Positions 1,090-59,321 of a DNA stretch of 64,000 nucleotides are shown piece after piece. This DNA is from Ostrea edulis (taxonomy: Eukaryota), in assembly GCF_947568905.1 (NCBI RefSeq), contig NC_079172.1, positions 36,704,001-36,768,000 on the forward strand, read 5' to 3'. Under the pieces are notes generated by a model. It ran no database searches. It saw only the letters and a list, made by a program, of their open reading frames with translations, and was not told where the DNA came from. Position 1 is the first letter of the stretch, and each line of letters starts with the position of its first letter. The translations under genes and the position numbers were made by a program.

Positions 1090-1161
1090 CGATCTTGAAA
1101 GAAATCAACTAACAACGTTGGAGAAGGGAGCGTTTGAAGGATTGGGAAATTTACAGGAACT
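1090..1161 (+). CDS. Internal coding exon, one 24-aa LRR (x-DLERNQLTTLEKGAFEGLGNLQEL), phase 2-2
   Basis: TTTAG acceptor, GTAAGT donor, exactly 72 nt, open frame matching xLxxNxLxxLxxxxFxxLxxLxxL. Confidence 0.93.
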
Positions 1162-1265
1162 GTAAGTATCTCTACATACACTTTGCTCACTATGAACTAT
1201 TTTTTAATTGGAATCTGAACTATTCTATTTAAAAATGAATACTAATGTTATTGAAATATATTTTT

Positions 1266-1510
1266 AGCCGACCCCTTTTTCTATTCCTATAAAGCAGAGT
1301 TTATTCAAAAGTCTCTAAATGAGAAGAATAAAAACCATTCTTGTTGTGGCGTCGACACTTAGATATATTGACAACGTTTATCTATTAACAATAATCATTT
1401 TCATTCATATATCGACTCGATATATCCCGGTGAACGCGAAATAAAGGCACCACAGAGTCCTCAACATTTCCTTCGTACATATACATTTTATTGAAAATAG
1501 ATATTAACCA
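1266..1510 (+). mobile_element. Penelope-like (Naiad-type) reverse transcriptase fragment, decayed
   Basis: Translates to YSYKAEFIQK...LRYIDNV.SINNNHFHSYIDSIYP, homologous to 29900-30150. Confidence 0.8.
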
Positions 1511-1784
1511 TAAACTAACTGACTATTAATACATGCATATTTATCTATCTATTTAATGTAACCAAGAAATGATTATGTCTATTTATCATAGTAGTTAGTA
1601 TATTGAAAGTTGTAATTAAGGTGATAAGAACTTATGTTGAAACCATTGTATATGATATACACTCATACAATGAAATCTGTTTAAATCAATCGTATTTATG
1701 TAGGCATATTTGCCATTATTACCCCCATATGATGTATACATTTCTAAATTTATTCAATACGCATGTGCTTGTTCTACGTATTAT

Positions 1785-2170
1785 CAGGCTACTAAAGTTG
1801 ATGTTACAGGGGTTTCAAATATCTCCTTTTTAATCAGAATTTCGCAATTTTTATGGTCGTTACAATGATTTAGTCTGCCAATGCAACTTATCTTTAAATA
1901 GAGTGCTCTCTGACATGTTTCATAGCGATTGTTAGGCCTTTCTTGGGGCACTGATTTGACTAAAAATTAATCTGTTTACCTGATCAAGGGATATGGCTCA
2001 CGGCATGTGGGCTGTGACCGACTGTGACCGGTCGACAGGGGATGGTTACTCCTTCTAGGCACCTTATCCCACCTCTAATATATCCAGTAGTTCGTGTTTG
2101 CCCAGCTCTCTATTTTGTATTCCTTATATGAGTTATGAGATTGATCACTTTTCCTTATCTTCACCTTTTA
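1785..2170 (+). mobile_element. Penelope-like element 3' end (RT thumb remnant plus 3' UTR)
   Basis: KLMLQGFQ...FRNFYGRYNDL remnant, then the recurrent tail ending GAGTTATGAGATTGATCAC...TTATCTTCACCTTT. Confidence 0.8.
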
Positions 2171-3029
2171 TTGATACCATCATGTATGTAAGAAAACTTG
2201 TGTGGTTTTTGAAATTTATAAAGGTAGGAAATGTCGTTCAAACATGTAAATGTACATATACGATATCGAAGTTTAAAGAACATTATAGTAAACAGATTAT
2301 TGGAGGGAATACTATTAAAATAACATAAATAAAGGCGATTAGAAAGTAAGGTGTGATTTATATAGCCGCCCATTGGGTGAAATCGAAAGAAAACTGCTAG
2401 ATTTTTTAAGCACATAAACAAATATAAAATCATTATCAAGAAAATTTATAATTGGTTTTTAAATTGTAAGTTTAGGGCCTAATTTGGGTGCTTATCACTG
2501 GCGGATCTAAAATGGACTTGTGGGAGGGCATACCCCTAAAAATTTTAAAGGCTTCATAAAATTATGTTTCCTTTGTTAGAATACAATTTAGATTTACTTT
2601 TTTGATGGAATAGATAAATAACATATATAAAAGGAATCTCTTCATTGATTTGTTTTCTTTAAAAACAATATCATGAAATGTTAAGCTCAACGTTTATATG
2701 TCTGTTTATGTGTTGATATTGGATGTGTCGTGTTAAAATGTCGTAGTACTTAAAATAAGTTATGTTAAGATCAGCGGGTGCGCATCAAAAGATCGTGAAA
2801 TGCACAATACTTACTGGCACTAAAGAACTTCATCGACGTTGAGAGAATTTTTTATTTTCATTTTGTGACAGTACTTTTTATCTAAAGAATTTTTATTTAT
2901 TTCTGAGTACATGTATATCAATAAAAATTCAGCTGGTAACCCGCTTGCACCCGACCTTTTGTTTACAAATACGACTTATTGATGTTTTCCAAAAGTAAAA
3001 TGTTATGGGTTATTCAACTGACTGTCATA

Positions 3030-3846
3030 CACCTGCACTAATGTACCCCTCTCTGATTTTGTTCTATTCTGACGTTTTCGGGAAAGGGCTACAAATCCAC
3101 AGGATCTTCGTAATGGTTCAAAATATTTTTCCCATTAACTTGTAATAAACCCCTAGTATTTGTCTCCAATGTTATTTACACCAAAACATCTTACTAACTT
3201 TGTGCTTGGGTATGTCTAATAGAGGTGTTTTTTTATTTGAATATCACGTACAACATGCTAAATTCTTCGTCTGCTCCTCCATGCTTGTTATCGTGAGATC
3301 TTGTAGGTGGATCAACTGAAAAACTTAAACATTGACAATCATCTCTAAAATGTAGATAATTGAGTCATTCCGACAAAGGAGGGAAAATGATATGGTGGCA
3401 GAACAAATATACATTCTGCTGTTCGTTTTTTAACTTGATATCAAATTCAAACTTTATTTAATACTGACGAATCCGCTTTTTCCTCCGTACTCGTCCATTG
3501 ATGTAAACACTACCTTACATTGGCATATAGCGCCCGGAAGTTGAAACTTCAGTAAATCATACATGGCGCATAAATATGAATCTAAATATGAATATATAGA
3601 AATTGCTGCAAACGGTAAAATAGAGCTTCGGAAATCGTAATATGCAGATTGTAAATTCAGATAATGTCAAAGAAACATAGAATATCATTTTATTTACGTA
3701 AAGAAAGTCAGCTAATATGTAGAATGATCGAAAATGTTGCAGTAGTGAATCACTCCCGCATCTGCAATATTACTGATATCCTAAGACGTTTTAACCCCCC
3801 CCCCCTCCCCAATGAAAAATCTAAGGGGAGCACATCATTACAGCTA
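3030..3846 (+). mobile_element. hAT-like MITE, older copy (same family as 60085-60928)
   Basis: Degenerate terminal inverted repeats CTGCACTAATGTACCCCT / CATCATTACAGCTA. Homologous in reverse orientation to 60085-60928 and also present at about 62595-63421. Confidence 0.7.
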
Positions 3847-5526
3847 GAAATTACAATGCGGGGAATTTACGATAGCTGTCACAGTCAAAATATAGGTAGT
3901 ATCGTTTCGGTTTTTAACCGTAAGAGTTCTAGAACTCTTAAGTAATTTCACCACAAAATTATATTGTATTTTACTACGGAAGTTCTAAACCTAGTTGCGT
4001 AAAGCACTTTAGTGTATTTTTAGAAAAGCGCCAATACTCTGCATAGCGTTCAACATAAAAACAAGTTTAACTATCGATCTTAATTATTGTGTTTTATTTT
4101 GATAATTCTAAAGGTGTAAAATCTTTTTTCATATTGTCATCTAATTTCATTTCTTTTGATTGTGTTTTATTGTTACATTCTTCTGCTCATCTTTTTAATA
4201 CACCTTAGCGTAATTTGTTTTATATAAGGCGCTATCTAAATTTTGTTATTATATTTGCAACCGGAGTGTCCAGGACTCAATCCCTGACGGTAACACACAA
4301 TACGTTTGAAATGAAATATATAGTGATTGTTTATTTGTCAATCAACTCACAAGTGATGTGAAAGTATGGCTGCTTATGAGATACCTTGCAAACCGATATC
4401 ATCTATCACGGCCACTGTTGTCGCGATAAAAAACAAAAACTTATTTCAAGAAACTCAACATTTAGACCCTGAAGCGTTCTGTTACCGTTCTGTTCTCGAT
4501 AAAAAATGTCCAATTCCCACCTTAAACTGTTTTGTTCTCGATAAAACCGTTCCATTCCCACACTAAACTGTTTCATTTCAAGCGTTCAGCGTTTTGTTTC
4601 AAGCCCAAACCGTTCGTTCCCACAAACTATGCGTTCCCGCATGGTCACTTGGAACTCGCACGTCAGTTTGTTATTTTATTTCAACATGGCGTTAGGTCGA
4701 CATGGAAAATGCTATCGTTCCTGATTCGACACAATATTTTAAACTTGTACAAGGGTGGACAGTTCTGCAGTTCACATCCGTAAATGTTTACCGACAAATT
4801 ACAAGTATATCACGACACGACAAAGTATATTCTTAATCAATGGGTAAAATCTTTTTACTGAAGAACAAAATGAATGAACATGGATGTTTCATTTTTAAAC
4901 CAATAAATAAATAAATGAATAGCAATAATGTTACTGTTGATGAAAAGAAAAAGCTCGGAAATAAAATGTCAAATTACATGATCTGCTTTAAGTACGGACA
5001 ACTCTTACATTGATCTGAATTTGACATATTTCCGAGTCGTGAAAATGTTTTTCGGGAAATCAAAAACAATCATTTATAAGAATTCCAAAAGCAGTTTGTG
5101 TGGTGTCATCTTCAAAAGAGGGTATGAATTGGTCGAGGCACTAAGAGTTGCTACAGTAATGGTGTACATTGTACTAGTCTACGGGAGAGTGGACACAGAG
5201 TTCACACAATAGGTCCCCATCTCAAGTGACTTTGCCCTCTTTCATATCCTCTTTTAATTTTGGGATATGTCACCCAAACCCTTTTAATGTATGTTTATCG
5301 AAAGGGTACCTTTATATGTACCATTAATTAACGTCACATGTCACCATGACAATGAAACAATGCAGGCATACCCCTATCGGGGGTTTTAATGCACAATGAA
5401 TATTTTTATTGAAAACTGTTATTAAGGGTTCTAAATTGAAATTCGATCCAGAATTGTTATTTATTATTAGATTACATAGACATTCATTGATGTATTCATT
5501 TTTTGATACATTCATTATGAAAATGT

Positions 5527-5745
5527 ATGAAAGGTGAAGATAACGAAAAGTGATCAATCACATAACTCCTATAAGCAATACAAACTATATAGTTGGGAAA
5601 AACACGGACCCCTGGGCACACCAGAGGTGGGATCAAGTGCCTAGGAAGATTCAGCATCCCCTGTCGACCGGTCACACCCGCCGTGAGCCCTATATCCTGA
5701 TCAGGTAAACGGAGTTAACCGTAGTCAAAATCAATGTGTCAGGAA
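5527..5745 (-). mobile_element. Penelope-like 3' end, 5'-truncated
   Basis: Reverse complement of the recurrent 3' tail (ATGAAAGGTGAAGATAACG...GTCAAAATC). Confidence 0.8.
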
Positions 5746-6724
5746 CTGTATATGATTTCAAACGCTTTAATGCACTACATTGAGCCCATATATAAATGTT
5801 CCAAATTACACGTTATACATGTACAAACTGAATTCCTCTTTAAAATTACCTGTGCACTAAGTAATCGGAAGAAAAAAAAATCATAACATTTTGAGTAAAG
5901 AGTGGCAATGTTACTTTGTATTATATCTAAATCGGACCACGCCTCAAATCACACAATTCCATTTTTCTAATGTGTAAAGTGATTTTTAATTGATTACATA
6001 CATGTGTAACACAAATATAAATATCCCCATGTGTAATGTAAGGCACATGTAATTGTATATATTAATATACTTCCCTCTCTCTTCCTTCTTTTTTAAATTA
6101 TTCATCATATCGATCAAATTAAACTTTTCTGACACGTACTCTCTTTCTTTTCCGCAATGTCTATATATGAATAAAAAGTACCAAAATTGTCAGAAATGCA
6201 GAATTTGAAATCGAAGCCAAACCGTTCGTTTTCAATTTTCGACCGAAGAAAACCGTTCGTTTTCAATCTCAATGTTTTCCGTTTCAGATAAAAACAGTTC
6301 CGTTATCGTTGAAAACCGTTCCCTTCAAACCGGTAAACGTTCGTTTCCCCAAACAGAACCGTTCATCCCTAAACCGTTCAGCGTTCGTTCACTGTTCCAC
6401 TGGCGTAGTAGTACACATCAGTCTGTACGACAAACATTTAAAGTAGTCACAATCTATGCAAAAAGTTCAGTGGAGAAAGGAGCAAACCACCTAGAATGTT
6501 TCACTTAGCAAAATCAAATGCTTGCAAATTTATTAATTCAACAAAGCAGTATCGATTTTATTTGAAGTACTAAAATATCTTAATAGAGTTTGAGAAACAG
6601 AGAATTCATTGATTCTTCTGGTCATATCATTCAAATGAAGTGTTGAGATTACTAGTATTACTTGTTTGTCAAATTGATAATTCCTAATCAAAGTTAACAA
6701 TGAAATGTTGAAACCTGAAACATA

Positions 6725-6890
6725 GACGGTTAGTTGGTTAGAAGGCTGATTGTTTTACGTCCTGTCGAGAATTTAACTTATGTTGAGACTTCACCAGCTA
6801 AAGTTGAAGTACTATTAATTCAGACCTATACCTAACGCTAAAGCCGTAACAGTGAGAACTCTTTAACATGCCAACCCCTGCACGTCCCGA
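6725..6890 (-). mobile_element. Degenerate 3' part of the SINE-like repeat seen at 46489-46751
   Basis: TTGGTT...TTTTACGTCCTGTCGAGAATTT...GAGACTTCACC matches the reverse complement of the 46.7 kb copy. Confidence 0.55.
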
Positions 6891-6899
6891 ACTGCTTTT

Positions 6900-7316
6900 A
6901 AATCCCGAACTTTCTTACACATTTCTTCGTCGGTGGCATCCAGTGGGCGTTCAGACCTGACTTCATCTGCTAAAGACGTTCTACTGCGTTTGAATTCCCC
7001 TATCCAGAATTTAACCTGAGCATAAGATGGTGCAGAATACCCATAACCATCGGCTAACTCGCCATGTATTTCCTTGCATGTTTTACCTTTTAAATGCAAG
7101 TACCGAATTATAGCACGGTATTCAACTTTAGATGAAACACATGCCTTTACATCTCTAGCCATGTTTGACATTCAATATCTTATTAAAGAATGACTCGATA
7201 CGCGTGCAATTTTGTACCAAGGTATAAAACATGTATTAAAACAAGGCATGAAAATCGTGACTGTCTCGATCAATCGGTAATGGAATGGGCTGGTTACCTA
7301 TTGACTCGCCCAAGTA
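6900..7316 (-). mobile_element. Mariner transposon 5' fragment (TIR plus N-terminal HTH of the transposase)
   Basis: The ORF EYRAIIRYLHLKGKT..EIHGEL...APSYAQVKFW..EFKR.RTSL.DE.RS.RP is a mariner HTH region. A TIR-like TACTTGGGCGAGTCAATAGGTAACCAGCCC begins at 7316 on the minus strand. Truncated before the DDD domain. Confidence 0.85.
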
Positions 7317-7396
7317 CTAATGAGATACCGCGACTGGTCGGATGTTTTGAAATACGAGCAAAATATCAGATACCTACATATCACCGGGATGATTAA

Positions 7397-7510
7397 AGGA
7401 CATATCTCATGTTTTCAAAGTATACAAAATTACATGCAAGAAGTTTTAGGCATGAGAAGAATTAATTTTGATGAAAAAATGAAAAAGTTTAGAAACACGC
7501 GTTGTGTCCT
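7397..7510. mobile_element. 114-bp Kolobok-like mini element
   Basis: TTAA on both sides (7393-7396, 7511-7514); imperfect TIR AGGACATATCTCATGTTT vs AGGACACAACGCGTGTTT. Confidence 0.6.
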
Positions 7511-8134
7511 TTAACACTCTTCTATAAATAGCGGAAGTTTGTTTCATGATATGTAATACAATTCGAAATATAAAATGCTTAATGGATCCAGATTGATCTA
7601 TCAGATAATCAAATAAAAATCTTACAGAAAAATGGTTTTGGAAAATTACAGATTTACAAACAGGGATATCTGAAAATGTCAATAAAAAAATTGATGTAGA
7701 TTATGCGCAAACATGTAATGATTGAAAAATTAATAGTGTCATAGCACATGAGATAGCATTGGACACAATATTCGTTCTTTCTACCTTAATCAGTAATACA
7801 TCCCGACATCCTCTTGATTTTTCTATCCTGTTTGTGTTCTTGTTCTACACATTATTAAATTACATTTTACATAACAAATGATATGTTTTGAAATCTATGG
7901 CATTTTGATGGAAACACCATAGTGATAATTTAGTGATAATATTTTGAACAAAAGCAAAGGTAGAAATATGTTTAAAAAGAAAGATCAGTCAAATAGATCA
8001 TTCAAAGAATAGAAAAGAAAGAAGGGAAGCAGGGACCCAAAGGAATTTTATTGTAGAAAGAATGAACAAGTAGTGACTTTAACACATATTAATATTTCAT
8101 TTTTTTTTTGTTAAAAGACAGGCTAATGCCAAAC

Positions 8135-8510
8135 AAGTTAATGTTACAGGGGTTTAAACAGTCTCGTTTAAAGTCAACATTTCGCAAATTATATGGTAGT
8201 TATTATGATCTAGATATATATGTAGTTTTCTAATACACCATATCATTGGGTCAAATGATGTTCGACTTCTTTTATATTCATTGTAAGACCGTTTTGGCGC
8301 TCTGATTTTGACTACTGACTACTCTGTTTACCTGATCAAGACATATGACTCACAGCATGTGTGACGGGTTGACATGGAGTTCTCACCCTTCCTGGTCACC
8401 TGGTTCCACCTCTGGTATACCCATGGGTCCGTTTTTGCCAAACTCTCTATTTTGTATTCCTTATGAGAATTTTGAGATTGATCACTGATCGTTATATTTA
8501 CCTTTCGTGC
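8135..8510 (+). mobile_element. Penelope-like 3' end
   Basis: AAACAAGTTAATGTTACAGGGGTTT...TTTCGCAAATT...TTATATTTACCTTTC, homologous to 30350-30720. Confidence 0.8.
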
Positions 8511-11211
8511 ATTATCACACGTACGCATATGTGTTTTAACATCTGCAAAGGCAACTGAAGATTATGCATGATAATCAATATGTTACAACTAATAAAAAAA
8601 AGAGAAGCAAATGAAAAGTATTTCATAGTTTACAAAGGTGAAGATAACAAGCTTTGATCAATCTCATAACTCCTATAGACAATACAAAATAGAAAGGTGG
8701 ATAACCACGGACCCTTGAATATACCAGCTTATTTTATGTCTTATTGTTAACTTGTCAGCAATAGACAAATAAAAGATTCATAAAAATTTAGTGAATATCA
8801 TCACAAAGCAAGGATAGGGATATAAAAGTTAAAATGATCAACAGTTATGGACGTTGTATGCTGTCATAAGGTTGTATATACAGCAATTTCACACCTGCAT
8901 TATTAAATACTATGTCAATATTCTTGAAGTGTGGGCTCCTCCCATAGTTAATCAGATAGAGATGTGATATTTTGCATCTATACAATTGAAAGGATACACA
9001 ATCTCTTCACTAAAGGAACGCATTTTTAAGTTCTGTAATGGCTACTTGGATGTCATAATTTTAACATTACAGAGGAGTTTACAATAATGGCAGAGCAGGA
9101 ATCAGTTATGTCTACGTGGATTGTTTTTTAAAATGCTGTACGGAAAGTGTACCAAGAATGATATGTTTTACTGATAAATGTTGATAATCACTGTTATTGT
9201 TCTGTCAGTACTGATGCATTCTGATTAATGGTGTTTTCACTGTTGTTATTGATATTTTATTGGTACAGTGACATGTTGATTCTTATTGTCGTTTGTACTG
9301 TGGATTTTGATGTTTGTTGATAAGTACTGAGAAAATACAATAAGTATTAAGTAGTTCCGATAAATACTGTGGCTATTGGTTTCCTCTCAGGAGGTCTAAA
9401 AATTGGTCGGGGTAAAATGAATGGTGTAGTTATTTTTTTTTCAAAAACAGTTTTTTATAATATGTATTATATCGTTTTAAAGTTATTCATATACATGTAA
9501 TTAAAACGATACCAAATAGTAACATTTGCCATGAGAAAACCTGGTTTTGAATATCTTCTCAGATTGATCTACTTCCTTATTTTTTTCTATAAAATTTCTT
9601 TCTTGTTGTTCACTTAACAGAAAGTGAGTGATGCATGCAATTTATTGTTTTGAATTTGAATTCGTATTCAGGAAATGATAAATAGTCTTGTAAAGACTGT
9701 AGTAGGGATATTCAATAAGTACTCACGCTGTTTTTCTTTCTCTCCGGAAGTTGCAGTGGTACAGTACCGAGTTCATTATTTTGATCATTCAGAGTGCTCC
9801 CATTCCTGTGTATTTGTTTAAGCATGGTCTATCCTTCCTCCCTAATGTCAAAGCACTTATTTTCTCTGCCGAGAATTCAGAGCGCCTGTTCTCCCATTTA
9901 ATATTTCTTTGATAATTAATACTGTACAATGAGGAAACGGTGACGATAATGAAACAATAAGTAATCTCGTAGCTCCTATCAGAAATACGAAGTTAAGAAG
10001 TAAAGAACTTAACTATATGCACTATACAAATCTGCAAATATTGGCCTTTTATGCTCAGAATAATCTCATTGAAGCATATCTGCCAAGCGATTGTGTGAAT
10101 ATTAGTCTACAATTTTCTAGTTCACTTAAAAGGGATATACAATTCATGAACATGATATTATGATACAGAGTCTTACGGAGTAAAAGAGGCTAATATGATC
10201 ATGCATTTATTTTCCAAATGAAAGTGAAATTAGCACTATTAAAAATAGATTGAATGCCAATTGTAGTAAATACTAAAGATAATATCCGTTTGTAAATTGG
10301 ATTTTTGAAAATCAAAACTTCATACAATTTAACCAGATATTGATTGTACTGTATAATGAATGGTACATCAACAATAATCGTCATTATAGATTCAATGAGT
10401 TATACAAATCATTCTATCATGGGAGTTGTTGATCTGTTTACACAATACACGTATTACTAACTTTGTTCCAATTTGTCAAAAACTTTGGAAAGAAAAATAG
10501 AGAAAGCCACGTGCATAAGCACAACTTTCTTACAAACTATGTAAAATCTTTCAGTATGCATACATGAACAAAATGAGCTATCATTTGATTGGATTATGTT
10601 TTACACCTTCCGTTCTCTTATCGATGACTGTACTATTCACAACACCATATGATGTCTCAATTGGATAGAAACAGTGTTAAGCATTCAATATATCAAGCTA
10701 TAGGACCCAGGGCGGGTTTTACCGGTCGCCAGGGAATGCTTACTCCTCCTAGACACCTGGTCCCACCGATCGTATATCCAGGGGTTCATCTTTGCCCAAC
10801 TCTCTATTTTGTATTCCTTAAAGAGTTATGAGATTCACCACTGTTCGTTATCTTCACCTTCCATATCATTGATGGAAAAGTGAAGATAACGAGTAATGTT
10901 CCATCTTATATATGGCCCAACTATCTATTTTGTATTGCTTATAGGAGTTATGAGATTGATCACTGTTCGTTATCTTCACCTTGCATATACATCTATGTGT
11001 CCTTTTGTCAGAGTACGATTTAAATTAAAAGATTTGATGAAATAGATGCATACAAATATATAACGTCGATTTCTTCAATGTGTAACTTATATACCGTCAA
11101 TCTCTTCAATGCAAGGTGAAGATAACGAACAGTGATCAATCTCATAACTAATACAGACTGGCGGGAATAGGGATCATAAGAAAGCTATGAGATTAGTTCA
11201 ATATTCAAACG

Positions 11212-11335
11212 TATTTGAATAGTAAGTATCTAACCGAAATGGGATGATTTCATCCAAAATATTTTACTAAAATTATTTGAATAGTAAGTATCTAACCGAA
11301 ATAGGATGATTTCATCCAAAATATTTTACTAAAAT
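11212..11335. repeat. 62-bp tandem duplication present only in copy B1
   Basis: TATTTGAATAGTAAGTATCTAACCGAAAT...TACTAAAAT occurs twice here and once at about 36206. Confidence 0.9.
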
Positions 11336-11714
11336 TATTTGTGGGGTTATGAGTTCACACAGACATTATGTTTCAAAATGAGTACGAGTATGGAAATGAA
11401 CTTGGGTTCAAATTGACTGGTTACCTAATATGACTACATCAACAACAAAAAATCACTTGAAGCTGTGAGTTTTTTGGGTCATATGTGGGTTCAGAGAATA
11501 TTGGAAAGTATGTTAGGAAACAAGTATAGTGGAAAAATATGTGAGGATTTTTAACATTAAATTTATGAGTCGGCGATGCAGGAATGCAGTGATATAGGGA
11601 ATCAACCATGCAACTGTCATTTGAGGGGTGGGACGTAAATCAAAGATAGTTATAAGGGGTTGATCTTAAGCTTTCTGATCTGTCCCAATATCTTCTTAAA
11701 GAGCTACAATTCTG

Positions 11715-12125
11715 CAGCTAGTTCTTTAGAAGATTCTTTAAAGATTTCCCATGTATATATTTCGCATGTAAAACTTTGATCCCCTATTGTGACCCCACCC
11801 AATCCCTATGGACCACCACTTTAACAAACTTGAACATGCACTATATCTGAATGTAAAACATTGATCCTCTATTGTGACCTCACTCTAGCCCCGAACACCA
11901 TGATTTACACAAACTAAGAACCTTTTAAGTGAATTTAGACTTTTCTGGTCCAGTGGTTCTTGAGAAGAAAGTTTTATTTTTAAATGACCCCACCCTGATT
12001 TTGCATTCTCATGATAATTTCCCCTTTGAAGGGTGCGTGACCCTTTTTATGATCAAACTTGAATCGCCTTCACCCATGGAAGATGTATATCAAGTTTGAT
12101 TGAAATTGGCCCAGTAGTTCTTGAA

Positions 12126-12161
<36 letters not shown>

Positions 12162-12222
12162 GACAAAAGGCAAAGGTGACCAGAAAAGCTCACTTGAGTT
12201 TTCGGCTTAGGTGAGCTAAAAA
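11715..12222. mobile_element. Helentron-type non-autonomous element (HINE) portion with satellite-like monomers; paralog at about 36655-37150
   Basis: Monomers with AAACTTGAATC / TTGGCCCAGTGGTTCTTGA, a CAGACAGACGGAC microsatellite, and the terminus AAAAGCTCACTTGAG...GGTGAGCTAAAAA typical of oyster HINEs (from recall). Confidence 0.65.
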
Positions 12223-12240
12223 GTATATAAACATGTTTAA

Positions 12241-27310: not shown

Positions 27311-27321
27311 GTAAGTACATG

Positions 27322-37053: not shown

Positions 37054-37089
<36 letters not shown>

Positions 37090-46488: not shown

Positions 46489-46751
46489 GGGGATCCGGGT
46501 TAGAATAGATCCTCAGTACCCCTTTGCCTGTCGTAAGAGGTGACTAAATGGGGCGGTCTTTCAGATGAGACCGCTAAAACCGAGGTCCCGTGTCACAGCA
46601 GGCGTGGCACGATACAGACCCCTCCCTGCTCAATGGCCATAAGCGCTAAGCATAGGCCTAAATTTTGCAGCCCTTCACCTGCAGTGGTGACGTCTCCATA
46701 TGAGTGAAATATTCTCGAGGAGGACGTTAAACAATAATCAATCGATCAATC
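46489..46751 (+). mobile_element. Near full-length SINE-like non-autonomous retroposon with (CAAT)n tail
   Basis: GGGGATCCGGGTTAGAATAG...GTCGTAAGAGGTGACTAA...GACGTTAAACAATAATCAATC. Absent from the paralogous site at about 22160; two other copies occur in the window. Confidence 0.75.
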
Positions 46752-46774
46752 TTATATGAGTGAGTTTTCTCAAA

Positions 46775-47258
46775 TTCCCTAGACTAGCTATGTAGTACCT
46801 CCTGCTGACTAGAAATAATAAAATCTACAGGCTAGCTTTGTAGTTCTTCATGATAACTAGAAATTATGAAATCCTGAGACTAGTTTTGTATTACCTGTTG
46901 ACAAGAAATCATAAAATCCCTCAACTAGCTTTGCAGTATCTATTGATGTCTAGAAATTATAAAAATCCTCAGTCTAGCTTTGTAGTATCTCATAATGACG
47001 AGGCATTATAATTTCCATAGTCTAGCTTTACAGTACAGTTTGGTCACTAGACATTATAAAATCCATAGTCTAGCTTTACAGTACATTTTGGTCATTAGAA
47101 ATCATAAAATCCTTAGTATAGCTTTTAGTATATCTTAATGACGAGACATTATAAAATCCCTCGACTAGCTTTTCAGTATCTGTTGATGTCTAGAAATTAT
47201 AAAATCCTTAGTCTAGCTTTGTAGTACAGCCTGATAACTCGACATTATAAAATTCAAA
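46775..47258. repeat. About 48-bp minisatellite, about 10 units
   Basis: Consensus CTAGAAATTATAAAATCCTTAGTCTAGCTTTGTAGTA...TGA, recurring at about 48-bp spacing. Confidence 0.9.
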
Positions 47259-50200: not shown

Positions 50201-53200
50201 AATTTTGGGACTAGACCATGATTCAGTATAGATCATGAGCCTTTAGAAACATGTATCAAAATGAAATGTAGAAATTGGACATGCACCCAAGCAATAATTC
50301 GTGCAACTGTTGGAGTATACAATGTATATGAATGCGATTGAGTGTGCTTGGTGATCGGACTTATTTGATTAATGTATAGAAGTTGAGATATGAACTAAAA
50401 GATGAGTTAACTTCTGTTATTTTGATCAGTTGAGAATTAATGTGTGATGTTGCATTATTTGACAATTTCTTTCATAGTAAATTCCCTGATAGAATATCTC
50501 AGTTTGTTAATCAGTCTGTTATTCTGTACCGTAGCATTGATGTCTTACCGTCACAATGCATATTTTAACTAGCAACCTCTTAAAAGCAATGTACAATTAT
50601 CATCATAATCTTTCAGAGGAACAATTATCTTATGGGATTTCCTGTATGATATAAACAGCTTTGATCTCTGTTCAAATTTGACCGCAAATCTAAGCTTTTT
50701 AAGTTCTTAAACGGGGGAAAATTCAACTTTCCGTACCATCACCAAATTTCTTGATAAAAGATTATTTCAATTTAATTATCTTTTATAAAAGAATTATACG
50801 ATGACTGTGCATCTCATCATTTTAGGCCAATTTAAATGTTTAACACCCAATAAATAATTACAAAACAAATTTAACAATTATATATGTTACGGTATAAAAT
50901 TTTTTTAACACGTAACGTCGAGAATGACGTCATTACGTAAAATCCGTAAGTCCAAGTGTGTGGTCAAACAACATTTGACAACTTTAAACTTCATAATATT
51001 AGATTATAACTGAAAACTCGGAAACAATTAACCTCAAATAAAAATCAATACCCATTCTGAAATGCTAACTCAACGAGAGAATAGCCCATGTTTGTGATTG
51101 TCTCAATGGTTAGATAAACTATGTTCATATCATGTAGTTGTCCTTGATTTCTATTTAACAATCACTTCTATTGCAATACACGCATGTGTTTATTGCGCCG
51201 GTGTGGCATGATTTCCGTTCCCGATAATTAAGCTTTCCTATTGAAACTAGATATAGAGATGATATTGGTTGCAGGTTATAATACAAGCTCCGGCCCGCAT
51301 AGTTCTAGGCAAATACCAATTCCCGAAATATTGAATGTTTAACAAAATATGTCATGGTTTTTTGAGGCGGATTGCGATAGCGAGAAGACTCATATGTTCA
51401 CCGGCACTTCATTTCCGACTTTGAGCACAAATGTTTGTTGATACATACGTGAGATAATGCAAATAATTCTTAATATCTAGCCATTGAAATTTCGGCAAAA
51501 TATGGGAAATATTGTGCATATCAAAGTGGTTGGTTTAAACACACTATTGGTTATTGTGTTCTTGCATTTAAAAGCAGCGTTACCTAATTTCAATATGTTC
51601 GTTATCATTTGGTTTGGAGACAACTCGAACGTGCATGAATCCGTTATGTACATTGTTCAATCTCTACCCAGAGTTATCGTTCCTTCGCAGCACACCTAAG
51701 GTGGCACGCGGAAATTTTGTCGAAAATATGCTATCGAAAAACATCTTTATTAGGACGGATCGAATATTTTGGAACTTTACTGATATTGGATGAATTTATG
51801 ATCGACTAAAAATACACAATCAGGACAATTATATTTTATATTTAGACTGAGCACGTAATTCGGTGTCGGATGGTTTTAGAAAATATGCCTGTGATATTGA
51901 TGTCATCAATGGATTTCGATATTGTGAGGGTATAATGATGTTGAAATTCAACTTTAATACATGAACGTTTTTAACAGCCTCTGTAGTTATGAAAACGCTG
52001 CAGAGTTCTAGAGATTCCGATTGATAATTGTTGAAATAATATTGTATCACGTGTTGAATATTATGCCGGTTTATGTTTTATTTTAATTTGAAATGAATAA
52101 GTCATTTCTAAAATGTTATCAGGATAGCAGCATTTTTCAAATAGTCTAATGTTTCTTTGGTTTACTCATTATCAAGAAATCGATTTGTAAAACCCACCCA
52201 TTTGCCAACTTATCAACAATAAAGCATTAATGTTTTCCTACAGTATAGATAGAAAATATTTCAGAGAATTTATAAGAAAGGCATTGTTCTAAAATTAACA
52301 GGCTTATAAATATCTGCAAACATTTCTCCATTTAAGTGTAAAATATTTTTTTCACGAAGAAAATATAGTTGATCCACCACTTCTTGCAAATGAAATGCAT
52401 CAGACTATCATGATGATGTCATGATGACAAGCGCATCGTGATCAAATGTTTGCCTATATATCAGGGTGTCAGATTACATTAACAACACAGAATTCCCGTT
52501 GAATGGTAAGTTTTTGTGTAGTGCAGTACTTCCGTGCTATTTAGAAACATTAATTATTTTCCTGATGTTTTGAATGATTGTGATATTTTGTTGTTAATGT
52601 GTGATGTCACAAATACACATCCCTGTATAGATTGGGACACGCCTCCTTACTGGAATCTTAACTGTGCTGTGTTACAATCGCCTTATCAGTGTTATTCCAC
52701 ATGTAAATCCATTATTCTAACGGAATTCTGACGAAAATATATCTGGAATGCTTAAACGAAATATATATTTGCTTTGTTTAAATAAATGAGCAACGAACTA
52801 GTTAAAACATCATTTACATACGCACGTGTTATGTTTTTGCGATAATACTTCATGTAAACAGAATGAAGAAAGAGATGATCAAGATATTTGAAGACTGCAG
52901 GAAACTAATTTGTATCGATACCCTCTACGAATAGTGTCCGCGCTGTTACTGTTTTAAGGTATTTTGCGGATGTAAAACAGATGTAAAACTTGTCTTTTGA
53001 TGTTTGACATACAAGTACAAATAAATGATAATCTCATGTAGATATGCTGGGTACCAAGGATAATCAGCTTTCATATTGAACTTTTATGTTTACACAATGT
53101 TTGAAGCTTTTATGGGTAAATTCCTCTAGCTGATGTGTCGTGATCCTGGTTTGTGACATTACATTTCAATAGATATCTAGTGAAGCATAATATGCATGCT

Positions 53201-53271
53201 TTACAATACTTTAAAGATTCAGAATTAAACTCATAAGACGGTGCTGTATACCTTATCCCCTTGTTGGAAAT

Positions 53272-53485
53272 GGCGGGCGAGTCGACTCTGGGGCCCTTGA
53301 GGCCTGGTGGGCGAGTCGACTCTGGGGCCCTTCAGGCCTGGCGGGCGAGTCGTTGTGGCCGAGTGGACTTACGCACTGGTTTGACAATCTTGCTAGGCGG
53401 TGGGTGCCGTACATTGCTGGTTCGACCCCGGGCGTGGGGCGAAAATTTTCAGTACCTAGTTGTGATTATTTAGTGCTTTATATAT
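53272..53485 (+). mobile_element. tRNA-derived SINE-like element preceded by 2.4 copies of a 34-bp GC-rich unit
   Basis: GTCGTTGTGGCCGAGTGG (A box; Ser/Leu-tRNA-like start) at 53349 and GGTTCGACCCC (B box) at 53419. No clean cloverleaf. Tail ends GTGCTTTATATA. Confidence 0.7.
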
Positions 53486-53561
53486 TAATTAATTGATTAT
53501 CACATGTATCGTTTAGATCCTAGGGGTAAACGTAAGGTTGGGTGTTATAATTGTTTTTGTG

Positions 53562-53564
<3 letters not shown>

Positions 53565-53618
<54 letters not shown>
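53565..53618. repeat. (TA)n microsatellite; a second tract at about 54186-54240
   Basis: Pure TA dinucleotide runs. Confidence 0.98.
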
Positions 53619-53620
<2 letters not shown>

Positions 53621-54105
53621 AAGCACTCAAATGACCAACGACACGAACAACGAGATTGTCAAATTTTCGGGACGACCCGTCCCTTCTTCAGGACAAACAA
53701 AAATAATTACATAATGTGGTCAATATCAACAGAGCATAATAACAACAACTACATATAAATACATCTAGCACTACAACTACACTAATCTACAAACGTATTT
53801 ACAACGCAGACTACATGATTTTGGATCAGCTCTTTGGACGAATAAGGCATGTCCTAATTCGCTCCACTTTTAACATTGATTGGCAAGCCTAAAGACCAAA
53901 AACATGTAGTCTGCGTTGTAAATACGTTTGTAGATTAGTGTAGTTATAGTGCTAGATGTATTTATATGTAGTTTTTGTTATTATGCTCTGTTGATATTGA
54001 CCACATTATGTAATTGTTTTCGTTTGTCCTGAAGAAGGGACGGGTCGTCCCAAAAATATGACAATCTCGTTGTTCGTGTCGTTGGTCATTTGAGTGCTTT
54101 GTATA
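53615..54105. repeat. 203-bp inverted repeat with an 85-bp spacer, resembling inverted Penelope pseudo-LTRs
   Basis: 53615-53817 is the reverse complement of 53903-54105, with about 6 mismatches. Confidence 0.92.
53656..53696 (-). ncRNA. Putative minimal type I hammerhead variant (mutated counterpart at 54024-54064 on +)
   Basis: TTGTC-CTGAAGA-A-GGGAC-GGGTC-GTCCC-GAAA-ATTT-GACAA: extra A after the core and a palindromic AATT stem III. Confidence 0.6.
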
Positions 54106-54181
54106 ATTTTTTGTATTTGACCTTGTATCCATGTTGTGGATCCGACACTTTGAGGTATCGGGTGTTGTTGGAACTTTAGTG

Positions 54182-54243
<62 letters not shown>

Positions 54244-54879
54244 GTACATATATGTGTTAATTATACACGTATGCATATTTTAGAAATATATCTACATGAT
54301 ACCAAACATAGTATAGTAGATAAGGTTGTTTTTCTTTTACATTTAGAGATTTACATGCTAGATAGTAGTATTTTTCAATTTAAAAAAAAGCAGCATGAAA
54401 TAATATTGTTCATGGTAAAGATAAAATGAAGGAATATAAGTGGAAATCATTCTCGCATTGATTGCTTTAAATGATAATGATAGTAATAAAAAGACAAAAT
54501 ATATTTAGGTGTCAAAAAGATATCAATATGTAAAATCTAATATACACTTAAAAAGCAATGATTGATCCATATTGTTGCAAGGGAGACACAATCACAAACA
54601 GTTCACCACTTCCCTAACAACAAGTACTGATGAACAGGTCACCCTCAATTAATGATGGAATGCTATTGTTGGAAACTAAATATCAAATACGCAGTACATA
54701 TTATCGCAATACATTTGTGTTATGATATAAAGGATGAAAGTAACAAAAGAAATTCTCTCAAATAATTTATGATCTAGGAAATCGTATTTTGATTTCTTTA
54801 ATGTTAAGTATGTTCTATAGCAGTCTAATTGAACCTATATTAACAGATTATTCATACTTTCAGTTTTGTTTTCAAGACT

Positions 54880-55975
54880 TAACATAATTTTACTTTTGTA
54901 AATTCTAAAACCAATATATGAAATCACAAAGTTAAATGTATGCACTTTAAAAAAAGCCGAGAACAATATGTTTCCATCGAATGTCAATTTCGAGCACCAT
55001 TTCAACAGTATTCCATATCTGTCTTACATTTTGACATTCAAACATTAAATGTGCATTGTTTTAAATGACATCAGTACAAAATGTACAGTTTCTATGAACA
55101 TCTTTTTTCCATTTGCTAAGTAGATAATTGTTGCATAAAAGATTGTGCAAAAGTTTATAGTTAAATTCAGCAACACTTTTATCAACAACTTTGTATACAT
55201 TCTTTCTATAAATATTAGTCCAGTCTGACTTTTCCAACATACGTCTTTTCCCACATACTTTCCATATATGATCTTTGAAACTTATCATCAACAAAAATAT
55301 CTAAAAGAAGATTTGCCAATTTATAGATTCAATTTTTTCACTTTTAAATAAAACCATGTTTTCTTTTTCTGAATGGTATTTTGTCTTATGACTTATTTTA
55401 TTAAAAACGTTTCTTAGTATTTCATATCCACACAACCAGTTATGTTGGTTTTTAAGATTTGAAAAATCAGTAATATCCTTGAATCCAATTTCATTAAACA
55501 GATCATCTACTTTTCAAATACCACTTTTCATCCAATTCGAAAAACAAAGTGTCTCATTTTTATAAGTAAATCTTTTATTTTTCCAAATATTTGGGAAAAT
55601 TGTAATGTTGTTGATTTGCCCTTAATTAGCTTCATTGAAATATGTAATGGTTTCTCCATAAAATAGGGTATGTATTTATGTAACATTCCACTTTCATTCA
55701 AAAATGAGTCGTTTGTCTTTGATAGATAGTAAATATCCTTGATTCCTTTGACAAAAACTCTGGAAAAAGTGTTTTAATTTATGGTTACATGAGATTATTT
55801 TGGGGATCCATGATGCTTTAAGCGCTTTGAATTTGGATTTTGAGTCAACTATGTGTATTTCCACAATGTTAGATAAGACTCAGGTAGAGGGGACTAGCTT
55901 CTTTTGAATTGAATTGTTGACAATATTCATTTCTTTCGTATTTTTCATATTTCCATTTCCGTCATGTTTGATACA
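54880..55975 (-). mobile_element. L1/Tx1-clade LINE ORF2 C-terminal relic (zf-RVT region)
   Basis: DWTNIYRKNVYKVVDKSVAEFNYKLLHNLLCNNYLLSKWKK...CTFC, then HLMFECQNVRQIW...IRWKHIVLGF, and upstream SKFKALKASWIPK. Frameshifted. Confidence 0.8.
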
Positions 55976-56784
55976 ATTCTCACCCGCTACTTTTCTATTT
56001 CATCAAATTTAGACAAAATGCGTGTTCATGGTCGTTCAAGTCATTTGAATGAACAAACGGCGGTGAGAGGGAAGGTAGAAAGTAGAGCTGATTTCAGATT
56101 TATTCAGTTTTCAGAATAGTATCACACTGAATATCTCACTCCCATCACCCTCACCACTGTACTAGATATAGTTCCCTCCTTTTTAAACTTCGAAAGATAG
56201 TTATATCTAAGAATTTATGTATAGTATTCACAGGTACTTAAACAAAAGTTTCCTGTAATTTCTGTCTTCACCACATTGAGCTTAATCTTATGAATTAAAA
56301 TCAATATGATGAAAATCCCTGTCACTATTTCCATTTATCATATACTTTATTGCAACAGGACGATTTTTAGGGGGGGGGGGATGGTTATGGTGTTTGATTT
56401 AACTTGACGGTGTTTAATTGAAACCGGAAGGTAATCCTAATTCCATAATTCCTGACTTTCAGTAAGAATATTAGTGAACACTATGATATTTTGGTATGTG
56501 TGAATGTTCCTTTATCTATTTTTAAATCGTGTTTTAAAAATCGTCAGCATATCGCACACAGAAGTAATGTATTGACATTGCCAGAATAAATGTTGACATT
56601 GAACAAAAAAAATAATTTTATGCCGATTTCGGAATTATCAAACAAAGGGTTCAATATTGAAATCACTCGGGGTTGTGTCTATGTGTAACTTTACAAATCC
56701 TCATGCTAGAAAATCTCGATAATCCCATCTTTTTATATATATATGAGCATCAATATAAATCAGATATATTAAATAATTCAATTA

Positions 56785-57125
56785 TAATGATCAACAGTCT
56801 CGTTTAAAATCAGCATTTCGCAAATTATATGGTCGTGAAAACAATCAATACAACCTATCATTGGGTCAAATGTTGTTTGACTTGTTTCGTACCTATCGTT
56901 AGACTGTTCTTGGCACACTAACTTTGACTACGGAATACTTCGTTTACCTGATTAAGATATAGGATTCACAGCAGGTGTGACCGGTGGACAGGAGATGCTT
57001 ACTCCTCCTTGACACCTGATCCCACATATAATATATCGAGAGGTCCATGTTTGCCCAACTCTCTATTTTGTATCGCTTGTGGGAGTTATGAGACTGATTA
57101 CTGTTCGTTATCTTTGCCTTTCACC
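56785..57125 (+). mobile_element. Penelope-like 3' end
   Basis: Same recurrent tail as 30350-30720. Confidence 0.8.
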
Positions 57126-57469
57126 GAATCGGATTCCAAAAGAGGTGTCAGAAAATATTGTAATCAGACAACTACAATCTCTTAATGTAAAATTGTTTAC
57201 AAATTAATGAATTAATAAAGGAGATCAATTTCTTGATGAAGAGCGTCAAAATAGGATTTTCCTTTATTTTGATGTAAAGTTTTGTAAGGAACTCATTTCG
57301 AGTATGAATTATGCGCATTCATAACACAAATATCAGTTTTATAACTAACAGCTAATTCATTTATTACTTCTGGTTGTATTTCTTTATCATAAAGTATATA
57401 TCTTCCTCACAAATTTTTTTTTTTTTGAAAAAATGTCATAATATCTAAGTAACGGGCACTAAGGAGCGG

Positions 57470-58228
57470 AGGTGTTGTACATGTGTGATGGGGTGCTGTA
57501 TGGGTGTGATGGGATGTTGTGAGGGTGTGATGGGGTGTTATTTGGGTGTGATGAGGTAATGTATATGTGTGATGGGGTGCTGTATGGGTGTGATGGGGGT
57601 GTTGTGTGGGTGTGATGGGGTGTTCTGTGGGTGTGAAAAGGGTGTTGTGTGGTTGTGATGGTGTATTGTATGAGTGGGATGAGGTTATCGTATTGGTATG
57701 TTGGGGTGTTGTGAGGGTGTGATGGGAGTGTTGTGGGTGTGATGGGGTGTTGTACAGGTTTGATGAGGTGTTATTCGGGGGTGATAGAGTGTTGTGTGGG
57801 TGTGGTGGGGTGTTGTATGGGTGTGATAGGGTGTTGTGTTGGTGTGTTTAAATATTGGGTGTGTGATCGGGTCTTGTATGGGTGGATGGGTTGTTGTGTG
57901 GGTATGATAGGGTGTTGTGTGGGTGTGATGGGTGTTGTATGAGTGTAATGGGGTGTTGTATGGTGTGATGGGGTGTTGTATAGGTGTGATTGGGTGTGGT
58001 ATGGATGTGATGGGTGTTATGTGGGTGTGATGGGTGTGTTGTTCGGATGTGATGGGGTGTTTTATGGGTGTGATTGGGTGTTTTGTTCGTGTGATGGGGA
58101 GTTGTTTGGGTATGATGGGGTATTTTGTGCGGGTGTGACAGTTTTTTGAAGGTGTGGTGGGATGTTATGAGAGTGTAATGGGGTGTTGCTAGGTTGTGAC
58201 GAGTGTGTTGTGCAGGGGTGTTGTGATG
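57470..58228. repeat. 21-bp G/T-rich minisatellite, about 36 degenerate units
   Basis: Unit GATGGGGTGTTGTATGGGTGT and variants; almost no C on the + strand. Confidence 0.92.
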
Positions 58229-59249
58229 AATGAATTCGGGATGTTTACCTTCTTAGCACCCTCTTCTATCTGGTACTTCCAGGGGTAAAATTGTACTCAA
58301 CGGCTAGTGAAAGTATTATTCACTATCGGAAGAGTGTTTTAGAAGAATTTAGACGTATATCCCAAAAAGTATCAACAAGTGATGTTTTTGATTTTCATAA
58401 TTTTTTTGTTTGAAAAAATAAAACATTTAGCTGCGTCTTTGAGACATACCTTATTTCAAGGGCATTTGCTGTCATTTTGTCACCACATTGAATCTAATGG
58501 AAATTGCTTTTCATAAATACATACAACACCATTATTTAATAATTTCAAACACTTTTTAACTTCAAAGGATGGACATGAATATGTGATTTTGATGATTTGA
58601 TAATTATTGTCTTGCAAGACAATAATTCTTCCATATATTTTTTTTTACACTAAAATCGGTTATGTAACGTAGTTTTGTTAGGTTTCTCTTTTTTTGTAAA
58701 AAAAAAAAATGAATGTTTTTATTAGTCAGTGTTATATATATTTTATGTCATTGAAAGATTTTGAGACAAAAATAGCTATCATCACTTCCACAGTCAATGC
58801 CTCATTCAACTATTTATATTATTCATTAAATCAAAGCGAATTTTGGCCCTTAAATTATTATTGGTAAACAATACACCTTTTTTATCATTCCGGAAAATCA
58901 CCAACAATAAAACAGAATAATTGACAGTTTGTATCGGTCTTTTGATTGTGAAAGTATACTTCATATAAGGTGCTTTATGGAACAGATTAATTGGAATTTT
59001 GATGGAATGATTCACCTTAGTAGTGTTTATGAGATTGGTTGTCGTGTTTTATCTTCACCTTTTCATCAACACTAGAGAGGAACAGCATTCAACCCAACTT
59101 CATAATTTATTGATGGCTTTTCTGATATGTATCATTCCGTCTTCTTTCCAGATCATATATTAAATGTTCTTGATTTTTATTCATTGCGATCTAATTAAGC
59201 AATTCCGTGTCAATGATTGCCGGGTAATCAATATATCTTTTTAATATAG

Positions 59250-59321
59250 ATCTGTGTCCCGCAATCAACTAACAACGTTGGAGAAGGGAGCGTTTGAAGG
59301 ATTGGGAAATCTAGAGTCTCT
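59250..59321 (+). CDS. Internal coding exon, one 24-aa LRR (x-SVSRNQLTTLEKGAFEGLGNLESL), phase 2-2
   Basis: CTTTTTAATATAG acceptor, GTAAGT donor, exactly 72 nt, open frame; paralog of 1090-1161. Confidence 0.92.

What the first reader, a model, noticed from the sequence alone, without database searches (positions are those of the whole stretch)
1090..59321. LRR receptor-like gene built from single-repeat, symmetric 72-nt exons separated by 26-32 kb introns
Seen: three exons of exactly 72 nt, all phase 2-2, each encoding one 24-aa LRR. Every intron falls at the same position in the beta-strand (L|xLxxN). Established: symmetric exons can be skipped, duplicated or shuffled without frameshift. 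One-LRR-per-exon arrays are known in brown algal ROCO genes, and 24-aa LRR cassettes build agnathan VLRs; exon 2 resembles an LRRV module. Inference: this is part of a modular, probably immune, LRR gene whose repeat number and order can change genomically or by splicing. The termini of the gene are outside the window.
Basis: partly seen in the sequence, partly recalled or inferred. Interest (0 to 1): 0.82.

Follow-up and report, generated by a model that had tools for sequence, protein, structure and literature searches.

The report
Oyster LRR gene of amplified single-repeat exons
The three tiny exons are real: they open a 19-exon, 570-kb array in a flat-oyster-like genome, where one-repeat exons of a leucine-rich-repeat protein were recently copied with their huge introns and changed almost only at the predicted binding face; no RNA data could be obtained to show they are spliced together.

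Summary
Observation confirmed. Exons of exactly 72 nt lie at 1090-1161, 27239-27310 and 59250-59321 (+). All are phase 2-2 with AG/GTAAGT sites, and each encodes one 24-aa LRR. The introns are 26,077 and 31,939 nt.

These are the first three of 19 same-strand LRR exons in three subtypes (A1, A2, B) on C9:36,705,090-37,277,932. Spacing is 10-36 kb. An LRRNT-type exon lies 18.6 kb upstream of exon 1, and another lies 18.6 kb upstream of exon 16. This suggests two tandem genes with 15 and 4 LRR exons, or one gene plus a misplaced haplotype.

The "introns" are young segmental duplications, 98-99.9% identical and up to 32.8 kb long. Within each subtype every exon difference is nonsynonymous, about 20 against 0 synonymous. 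All fall in the codons for the concave beta-strand, which vary 10-100 times more than the flanking introns. The central 48 nt never vary.

So this is a functional, rapidly diversifying modular LRR gene. Genomic change in repeat number is supported. No TIR was found nearby.

The scan had already noted the same kind of gene on another piece of this genome (s1-274687, s1-274718). Brown-algal ROCO genes are the closest published precedent.

The parts
1090..1161 (+). LRR exon 1 of the array (subtype A1), 72 nt, phase 2-2, one 24-aa LRR
   Evidence: Read directly. Pfam LRR_8 E 8e-5. Four further A1 copies on C9, 97-100% identical over 901 nt.
27239..27310 (+). LRR exon 2 (subtype B), 72 nt, phase 2-2
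   Evidence: Read directly. LRR_8 E 1.8e-3. Ten B copies, all on C9, 98-100% identical over 251 nt.
59250..59321 (+). LRR exon 3 (subtype A2), 72 nt, phase 2-2
   Evidence: Read directly. LRR_8 E 2.7e-4. Four A2 copies on C9.
1162..27238 (+). Intron 1 (26,077 nt). No ORF of 130 aa or more with a Pfam domain. Built from duplicated blocks and dispersed repeats.
   Evidence: Segment 2124-11111 recurs after other A exons at 96-97%. Segment 14149-19819 recurs at 94-98%.
27311..59249 (+). Intron 2 (31,939 nt), almost wholly inside young segmental duplications
   Evidence: Segment 24786-35782 matches a copy 197 kb downstream at 98.4%. Segment 35837-64000 and beyond matches a copy 48 kb downstream at 99.2% over 32.8 kb.
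1..5717 (+). A1 exon-plus-flank unit, copied at least four more times. The unit starts about 12.7 kb upstream of the exon, outside the window.
   Evidence: 98.0% and 98.7% to copies 187 and 256 kb downstream. (homology reaches C9:36,692,403).
1030..1089 (+). Acceptor-side intronic stretch shared by A and B cassettes: the GTAATYAAGCAAT motif, the pyrimidine tract and the AG
   Evidence: A and B align at about 70% identity across about 58 nt of intron plus the exon.

Best explanation
The window holds the first three LRR exons of a very large, recently expanded gene from an oyster-lineage family of extracellular LRR proteins. In this family an LRRNT-cap exon is followed by a string of 72-nt exons, each encoding one 24-residue repeat.

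Shown: every intron interrupts the same Leu codon in phase 2. Any exon can therefore be gained, lost or skipped without breaking the frame.

Shown: unequal recombination or segmental duplication has copied whole exon-plus-intron units of 10-48 kb. This turned an ancestral short array (LRRNT-A1-(A2)-B-B-B) into 15 LRR exons over about 395 kb. A second LRRNT-A1-B-B-B unit sits next to it.

Shown: after each duplication, the codons for the solvent-exposed residues of the concave beta-strand (x3, x5, x7, x8 of LxxLxLxxN) changed by amino-acid replacements. These changes are far more frequent than changes in the surrounding introns. The scaffold codons and the splice sites stayed fixed.

Inferred: the exons are spliced in series into a secreted or membrane LRR arch. 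Selection favours new binding surfaces on that arch. The most likely role is recognition of variable ligands such as microbes or parasites, as reported for bivalve LRR-only proteins.
For: Exon anatomy. All 16 sequenced copies keep 72 nt, an open frame, AG and GTAAGT.

Array: 19 exons, all on the + strand, at C9:36,705,090-37,277,932.

LRR identity.

LRRNT: PF01462 hits on the + strand at C9:36,686,454 and 37,197,836. Both have an 89-aa open frame and both lie 18.6 kb upstream of an A1 exon. More than 40 hits of the same type lie beside the paralogous arrays on C10.

Young duplications: 98-99.9% identity, up to 32.8 kb.

Face versus intron variable sites: B 8/24 against 92/2750 (p 1e-6). A1 8/24 against 18/2464 (p 3e-11). 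A2 3/24 against 4/2794 (p 2e-5). The central 48 nt show 0 variable sites in every group.

Substitution rates for B/A1/A2: pN 0.057/0.097/0.039, pS 0/0.0055/0, intron p-distance 0.011/0.005/0.001.

The same four codons vary in all three exon lineages.

Older A-B divergence keeps the scaffold residues, the exon length, the phase and the splice sites.

Precedent: one-LRR 72-nt exons with exon shuffling and positive selection on the concave face in Ectocarpus ROCO genes (PMC3341825). LRR-only proteins act as pattern-recognition receptors in a scallop (PMC5877582).
Against: Serial splicing across 10-36 kb introns is therefore inferred.

The 3' end, and so the anchoring or signalling domain, was not found. 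The LRRCT search gave nothing nearby.

The LRRNT hits score 20.8 and 23.4 bits, below Pfam's 25.8-bit cut-off.

Between A1 and A2 the divergent patch also covers about 45 nt of intron upstream of the acceptor. Part of that older difference may therefore come from a conversion or recombination patch, not from selection on codons.

A 100% identical A1 cassette 511 kb away could mean that the second unit is an alternative haplotype placed in tandem by the assembler.

An immune role is by analogy only.
Confidence: 0.7

Rival explanations
1. A diversity generator. The symmetric exons are not all used at once. Cells or individuals include different subsets, either by cassette or mutually exclusive splicing (Dscam-like) or by haplotypes with different exon sets. 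One locus would then yield many binding surfaces.
For: All exons are 2-2 symmetric with the same Leu junction codon. The face codons differ between otherwise identical exons. A conserved intronic element lies upstream of every acceptor. The two LRRNT-headed units have 15 and 4 exons.
Against: No RNA data. Strong consensus donors (GTAAGT) and good acceptors on every exon favour constitutive inclusion. No docking or selector pairing was looked for or seen. Conserved acceptor flanks are explained by shared ancestry.
Confidence: 0.12
2. A non-functional or artefactual array. A gene fragment was amplified as a macrosatellite-like segmental duplication, or haplotigs and assembly duplications inflate the copy number. 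The exons look intact only because the copies are young.
For: The units are 98-100% identical, so an intact frame alone proves little. There are near-exact copies 286 and 511 kb apart. No transcript evidence.
Against: Neutral decay or assembly error would not place about 20 replacements, 0 synonymous changes and 0 indels in the same four codons of three exon lineages, with about 1 change expected at intron rates. The older A/B split still keeps length, phase, scaffold residues and splice sites. No decayed copy exists in 264 kb.
Confidence: 0.1
3. Part of a conserved single-copy gene that is classically built from 72-nt LRR exons, such as an LGR or relaxin-type GPCR or Slit.
For: These vertebrate and invertebrate genes also have one 24-aa LRR per 72-nt exon. 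This rests on my own knowledge and was not checked in a paper here.
Against: The repeats here are 98-100% identical recent copies in a lineage-specific array. Dozens of paralogous arrays and LRRNT exons lie on C10. Conserved orthologues have old, mutually diverged repeats. No 7TM or EGF search was run.
Confidence: 0.03
4. VLR-like somatic assembly. The exons would be donor cassettes copied into an incomplete germline gene.
For: 24-aa LRR cassettes with hypervariable concave-face residues.
Against: Every cassette has a canonical acceptor and a GTAAGT donor, lies on one strand and is in phase. That is the anatomy of spliced exons, not of VLR donor cassettes. No deaminase link was examined.
Confidence: 0.02

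Closest known systems
Ectocarpus (brown alga) ROCO and LRR-kinase genes with type I LRR exons (Zambounis et al. 2012, PMC3341825; also PMC11378527)
   Same: One 24-aa LRR per 72-nt exon. Frame-neutral exons. Recent exon duplication or shuffling. Positive selection on residues of the concave face.
   Different: Those are intracellular ROC-COR GTPases in an alga, with short introns and many inactivated or reverse-strand LRR relics in the introns. Here an LRRNT cap points to an extracellular protein. Introns are 10-36 kb and are copied along with the exon. No relic exon was found. No ROC domain was searched for.
One-repeat-per-exon LRR gene family noted earlier by this scan on another piece of the same genome (s1-274687, s1-274718)
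   Same: 72-nt single-LRR exons. Exon-plus-intron units copied many times. Binding-face codons changing faster than the introns.
   Different: This locus lies on a different chromosome-scale piece. It has much larger spacing and 19 exons over 573 kb with two LRRNT heads. I could not compare sequences with those windows.
Bivalve LRR-only proteins (CfLRRop1-6 of the scallop Chlamys farreri; review PMC5877582)
   Same: Small LRR proteins of bivalves without a signalling domain. They are reported to bind microbial patterns.
   Different: No sequence comparison was possible, and the gene structure of CfLRRops is not stated in the text read. The C-terminus of the present gene is unknown.
LGR/glycoprotein-hormone-receptor and Slit genes
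   Same: 72-nt, same-phase exons, each encoding one LRR (my own knowledge).
   Different: Those are conserved orthologues with anciently diverged repeats and added 7TM or EGF modules. This one is a young, lineage-specific exon amplification.
Lamprey/hagfish VLR loci
   Same: 24-aa LRR modules with variable concave-face residues. An LRRNT cap.
   Different: VLR cassettes are assembled somatically by gene-conversion-like copying and are not spliced exons. Here every module has splice sites and a fixed phase.
Human NLR and other LRR genes with strict exonic modularity (Hoss et al. 2019, PMC6642158)
   Same: Exon boundaries coincide with LRR units, which permits in-frame alternative splicing.
   Different: Those are intracellular ribonuclease-inhibitor-type LRRs with different unit lengths. 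They show no recent cassette amplification.

Membership tests
Extracellular 'typical' LRR protein with cysteine caps | Repeats fit LxxLxLxxNxLxxLxxxxFxxL (24 aa) | tested here: met
   Translations. Pfam LRR_8 hit for each single exon, E 8e-5 to 1.8e-3.
Extracellular 'typical' LRR protein with cysteine caps | N-terminal LRRNT cap exon upstream on the same strand | tested here: inconclusive
   PF01462 hits at C9:36,686,454 (20.8 bits) and 37,197,836 (23.4 bits). Both are below the 25.8-bit cut-off. Both lie on the + strand, in 89-aa open frames, 18.6 kb upstream of an A1 exon. The letters could not be fetched.
Extracellular 'typical' LRR protein with cysteine caps | C-terminal LRRCT cap, signal peptide, and TM or GPI anchor | tested here: inconclusive
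   The PF01463 search gave only 18 hits genome-wide and none near the locus. No NPxxCxC-type exon exists in the 264 kb in hand. The 3' region could not be fetched.
Toll-like receptor | Cytoplasmic TIR domain downstream of the LRRs | tested here: not met
   PF01582 and PF13676 searches of the whole genome. None of the 150 best hits of either search lies in C9:36.6-37.4 Mb. Only the best 150 of 230 and 256 candidates were scored, so a weak TIR is not excluded.
Brown-algal ROCO type I LRR exon genes | One LRR per 72-nt frame-neutral exon, with recent exon duplication | tested here: met
   compared with PMC3341825.
Brown-algal ROCO type I LRR exon genes | ROC-COR GTPase module in the same gene | not tested
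   No search for Roc or COR was run. The LRRNT cap argues for an extracellular protein instead.
Agnathan VLR system | Donor cassettes without splice sites, in both orientations, around an incomplete germline gene | tested here: not met
   All 16 sequenced cassettes have AG and GTAAGT, one orientation and one phase.
Conserved LGR/Slit-type genes | Anciently diverged repeats in a single-copy orthologue | tested here: not met
   Exon-plus-intron units are 98-100% identical. Paralogous arrays lie on C10.
Dscam-like alternative exon cluster | Alternative or mutually exclusive use of the tandem exons in mRNA | not testable with these tools

The most novel reading that the evidence does not exclude
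The locus is an invertebrate repertoire generator. From 19 frame-neutral LRR exons that differ almost only in ligand-contact residues, individual oysters (through haplotypes with different exon sets) or individual cells (through combinatorial or mutually exclusive splicing) would make different LRR arches. This would be a spliced, germline-encoded counterpart of the lamprey VLR idea.
Probability: 0.12. Interest if true: 0.85.

Novelty: new variant of a known kind. Interest (0 to 1): 0.58.

Why it matters
Molluscs have no known somatically diversified receptors. How they cope with fast-evolving parasites is open, and it matters for oyster culture, for example with Bonamia in flat oysters.

This locus shows in germline DNA a mechanism for quickly making new LRR binding surfaces. 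A whole exon-plus-intron cassette is copied, and then only the four contact codons change. The signal is unusually clean: about 20 replacements against 0 silent changes, on a 99% identical background. It defines concrete residues and exons to test for ligand binding, copy-number variation and association with disease resistance.

It also shows that a gene can grow to hundreds of kilobases by copying its introns along with 72-nt exons.

Tried and rejected

2. More flanking sequence. The LRRNT exons, exons 11-19 of type A and the 3' region are known only by coordinates. All ten B exons were obtained as loci.

3. Joined model. Exons were searched singly by reference. At 23-24 aa they are too short for the homology, representative, atlas or structure tools, so no database protein or orthologue was identified. 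The costly protein searches were not spent.

4. C-terminus. Genome-wide family searches for LRRCT, TIR and TIR_2 found nothing near the locus.

5. Internal first or last exons. None lies in the 264 kb.

6. Candidate extra LRR exon at 7592-7663. Rejected: no donor, wrong phase, no Pfam hit.

7. Coding content of the introns. Only two ORFs of 130 aa or more, and neither has a credible Pfam domain.

8. Rfam at gathering score found nothing in the window.

9. Neighbouring windows in the search of earlier findings cannot be addressed by place.
Full report
**1.

Reading the sequence gives three + strand exons of exactly 72 nt:
- E1 at 1090-1161
- E2 at 27239-27310
- E3 at 59250-59321

Each is preceded by a pyrimidine-rich tract and AG, and followed by GTAAGT. 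Each reads as 1 base, 23 codons and 2 bases. Every intron is therefore phase 2 and splits a CT|N leucine codon, the fourth position of LxxLxLxxN.

The introns measure 26,077 and 31,939 nt. Each exon on its own matches Pfam LRR_8 (E 8e-5, 1.8e-3, 2.7e-4).

Motif and AG-N72-GT scans of both strands found no other LRR exon in the window. An LRR-like frame at 7592-7663 has no donor, the wrong phase and no Pfam hit.

**2. The context is much larger than the window**

The window is C9:36,704,001-36,768,000 of an 895-Mb, ten-chromosome-scale assembly. Earlier notes of this scan call it flat oyster.

DNA and pattern searches of the whole assembly find 19 such exons between C9:36,705,090 and 37,277,932. 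All are on the + strand, in three subtypes. Their order is:

A1 B A2 B A2 A2 B A1 B A1 A1 A2 B B B, then a gap of 134.8 kb, then A1 B B B.

Spacing is 10.4-36.2 kb. In the resulting 264 kb there are exactly ten exons and no decayed copy. All ten B exons were also obtained with 1.5-kb flanks.

Weaker matches with 2-5 kb spacing on C10 show that this is one locus of a larger family.

**3. Gene ends**

A genome-wide search with Pfam LRRNT gave two + strand hits, at C9:36,686,454 and 37,197,836.
- Each lies in an 89-aa open frame.
- Each lies 18.6 kb upstream of an A1 exon (exon 1 and exon 16).
- The scores are 20.8 and 23.4 bits, under the 25.8-bit cut-off.
- A hit falling in so placed a 20-kb target by chance has odds of about 0.002.
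- More than 40 hits of the same 102-nt type lie mainly on C10, where the paralogous arrays are.

No LRRNT- or LRRCT-like exon lies inside the 264 kb. The homology of internal A1 units to the region upstream of exon 1 stops about 12.7 kb upstream, short of the LRRNT exon.

The simplest reading is two heads:
- LRRNT followed by 15 LRR exons, about 395 kb.
- LRRNT followed by A1-B-B-B, about 80 kb.

The last three B exons of the two units have the same spacing (10.4 and 24.9 kb). The second unit may be a tandem paralogue. It may also be the other haplotype, placed in tandem by the assembler. I could not tell which.

The 3' end was not found. LRRCT, TIR and TIR_2 searches gave nothing in C9:36.6-37.4 Mb, though only the best 150 candidates of each TIR search are scored.

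**4. How the array was built**

A self-comparison of the 264 kb shows that the "introns" are themselves duplicated along with the exons, in blocks of up to 32.8 kb at 98-99.9% identity. For example, window 35837 onward matches a copy 48.0 kb downstream at 99.2%. The A1 cassette of exon 1 recurs at 100% identity over 901 nt, both 286 kb and 511 kb away.

The introns carry:
- almost no open reading frames;
- dispersed repeats;
- a young element of about 1.9 kb with 535-nt inverted ends.

So the giant introns are not an old, conserved feature. They are the repeat unit of a young segmental-duplication array.

**5. Signature of selection**

This is the most informative result. Within each subtype I aligned the exons with 1.4 kb of flank on each side.

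| Subtype | Variable sites, first 13 + last 11 nt of exon | Variable sites, intron | p |
|---|---|---|---|
| B (10 copies) | 8 of 24 | 92 of 2750 | 1e-6 |
| A1 (3 copies) | 8 of 24 | 18 of 2464 | 3e-11 |
| A2 (3 copies) | 3 of 24 | 4 of 2794 | 2e-5 |

The central 48 nt have no variable site in any group.

All of the roughly 20 minimum changes are amino-acid replacements. Rates for B/A1/A2 are:
- pN 0.057/0.097/0.039
- pS 0/0.0055/0
- intron p-distance 0.011/0.005/0.001

The changes hit the same codons in all three lineages: nt 2-3, 8-13 and 68-70. These are residues 1, 3, 4 and 23 of the unit, which are the exposed x5, x7, x8 and x3 positions of the beta-strand LxxLxLxxN.

Neutral decay, sequencing error or assembly error would not give this pattern. 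It means that the exons are used, and that new binding-face variants have been favoured or maintained.

Between the older A1 and A2 subtypes the divergent patch also covers about 45 nt of intron upstream of the acceptor. A recombination or conversion patch may therefore contribute to that older difference.

The still older A/B split keeps exon length, phase, scaffold residues, splice sites and some acceptor-side intron motifs. That indicates long-term constraint.

**6. What it is and how it probably works**

It is part of a modular gene for an LRRNT-capped, hence probably extracellular, LRR protein. The gene has one repeat per frame-neutral exon.

Shown:
- Repeat number and order change in the germline by duplication of exon-plus-intron units.
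- Each new repeat diversifies at its ligand-contact residues.

Inferred:
- Serial splicing of the exons.
- Secretion or membrane anchoring of the protein.
- A role in recognising variable ligands. Bivalve LRR-only proteins are reported as pattern-recognition receptors (PMC5877582).

Untested:
- Alternative splicing.
- Variation between individuals.
- Any immune role.

**7. Comparison with what is known**

The nearest published design is the Ectocarpus ROCO/LRR-kinase system. It has one LRR per 72-nt exon, exon shuffling and positive selection on the concave face (PMC3341825; also PMC11378527). That system is intracellular and algal, has short introns and is littered with inactivated exons.

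Exon-LRR modularity is also described for human LRR genes (PMC6642158). To my own knowledge it also holds for LGR and Slit genes, but those are conserved genes with old repeats.

Lamprey VLR cassettes are not spliced exons, so that comparison fails on a defining feature.

Within this scan, the same kind of gene was already described on another piece of this genome (s1-274687, s1-274718). I reproduced the claim about binding-face codons independently on this locus.

I therefore class it as a new variant of a known kind. It is notable for three things: the scale (19 exons over 573 kb), the copying of 10-48-kb introns with each 72-nt exon, and the very clean face-restricted replacement pattern.

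**8. Limits**

Single exons are too short for the homology and structure tools, so no database protein or orthologue was identified.
- Three A-type exons (numbers 11, 12 and 16) and both LRRNT exons are known by coordinates and core pattern only.

Noticed in passing
window 27316-27400: An 85-nt dispersed repeat starts 6 nt after the exon-2 donor. It has 873 first-look candidates on all chromosomes, at 88-92% identity. Another note places a hammerhead ribozyme here. Rfam at gathering score reports no family anywhere in the window.
   Followed up: partly
window 1261-1519 (also 29940-30176 and 59446-59747): A dispersed repeat of about 260 nt, SINE-like, lies about 100 nt downstream of the A-type exons. 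It has 4794 first-look candidates genome-wide at about 80% identity.
   Followed up: no
L012:5243-7145 (C9:36,883,243-36,885,145): An element of about 1.9 kb with terminal inverted repeats of about 535 nt. Many 95-97% identical copies lie on every chromosome, including the LRRNT-to-A1 introns. It looks like a young foldback/TIR transposon.
   Followed up: no
window 7592-7663: An LRR-like open frame (IDLSDNQIKILQKNGFGKLQ) without a donor site and without a Pfam hit. It is copied five times along with the A unit. It may be an ancient relic exon or chance.
   Followed up: yes
window 57468-58220 and 46772-47256: Diverged tandem repeats, about 74% identical between copies, seen in the self-comparison.
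   Followed up: no
C10, about 16-43 Mb (coordinates only): More than 40 LRRNT hits of the same 102-nt type, in 69-89-aa open frames, plus LRR exons related to type B at 2-5 kb spacing. The one-LRR-per-exon family is large and is centred on another chromosome.
   Followed up: partly
window 1030-1089, 27179-27238, 59190-59249: The acceptor-side intron is conserved between A and B cassettes, with a GTAATYAAGCAAT motif about 55 nt upstream of the AG. This could be shared ancestry, or a branch-point or splicing-control element.
   Followed up: partly
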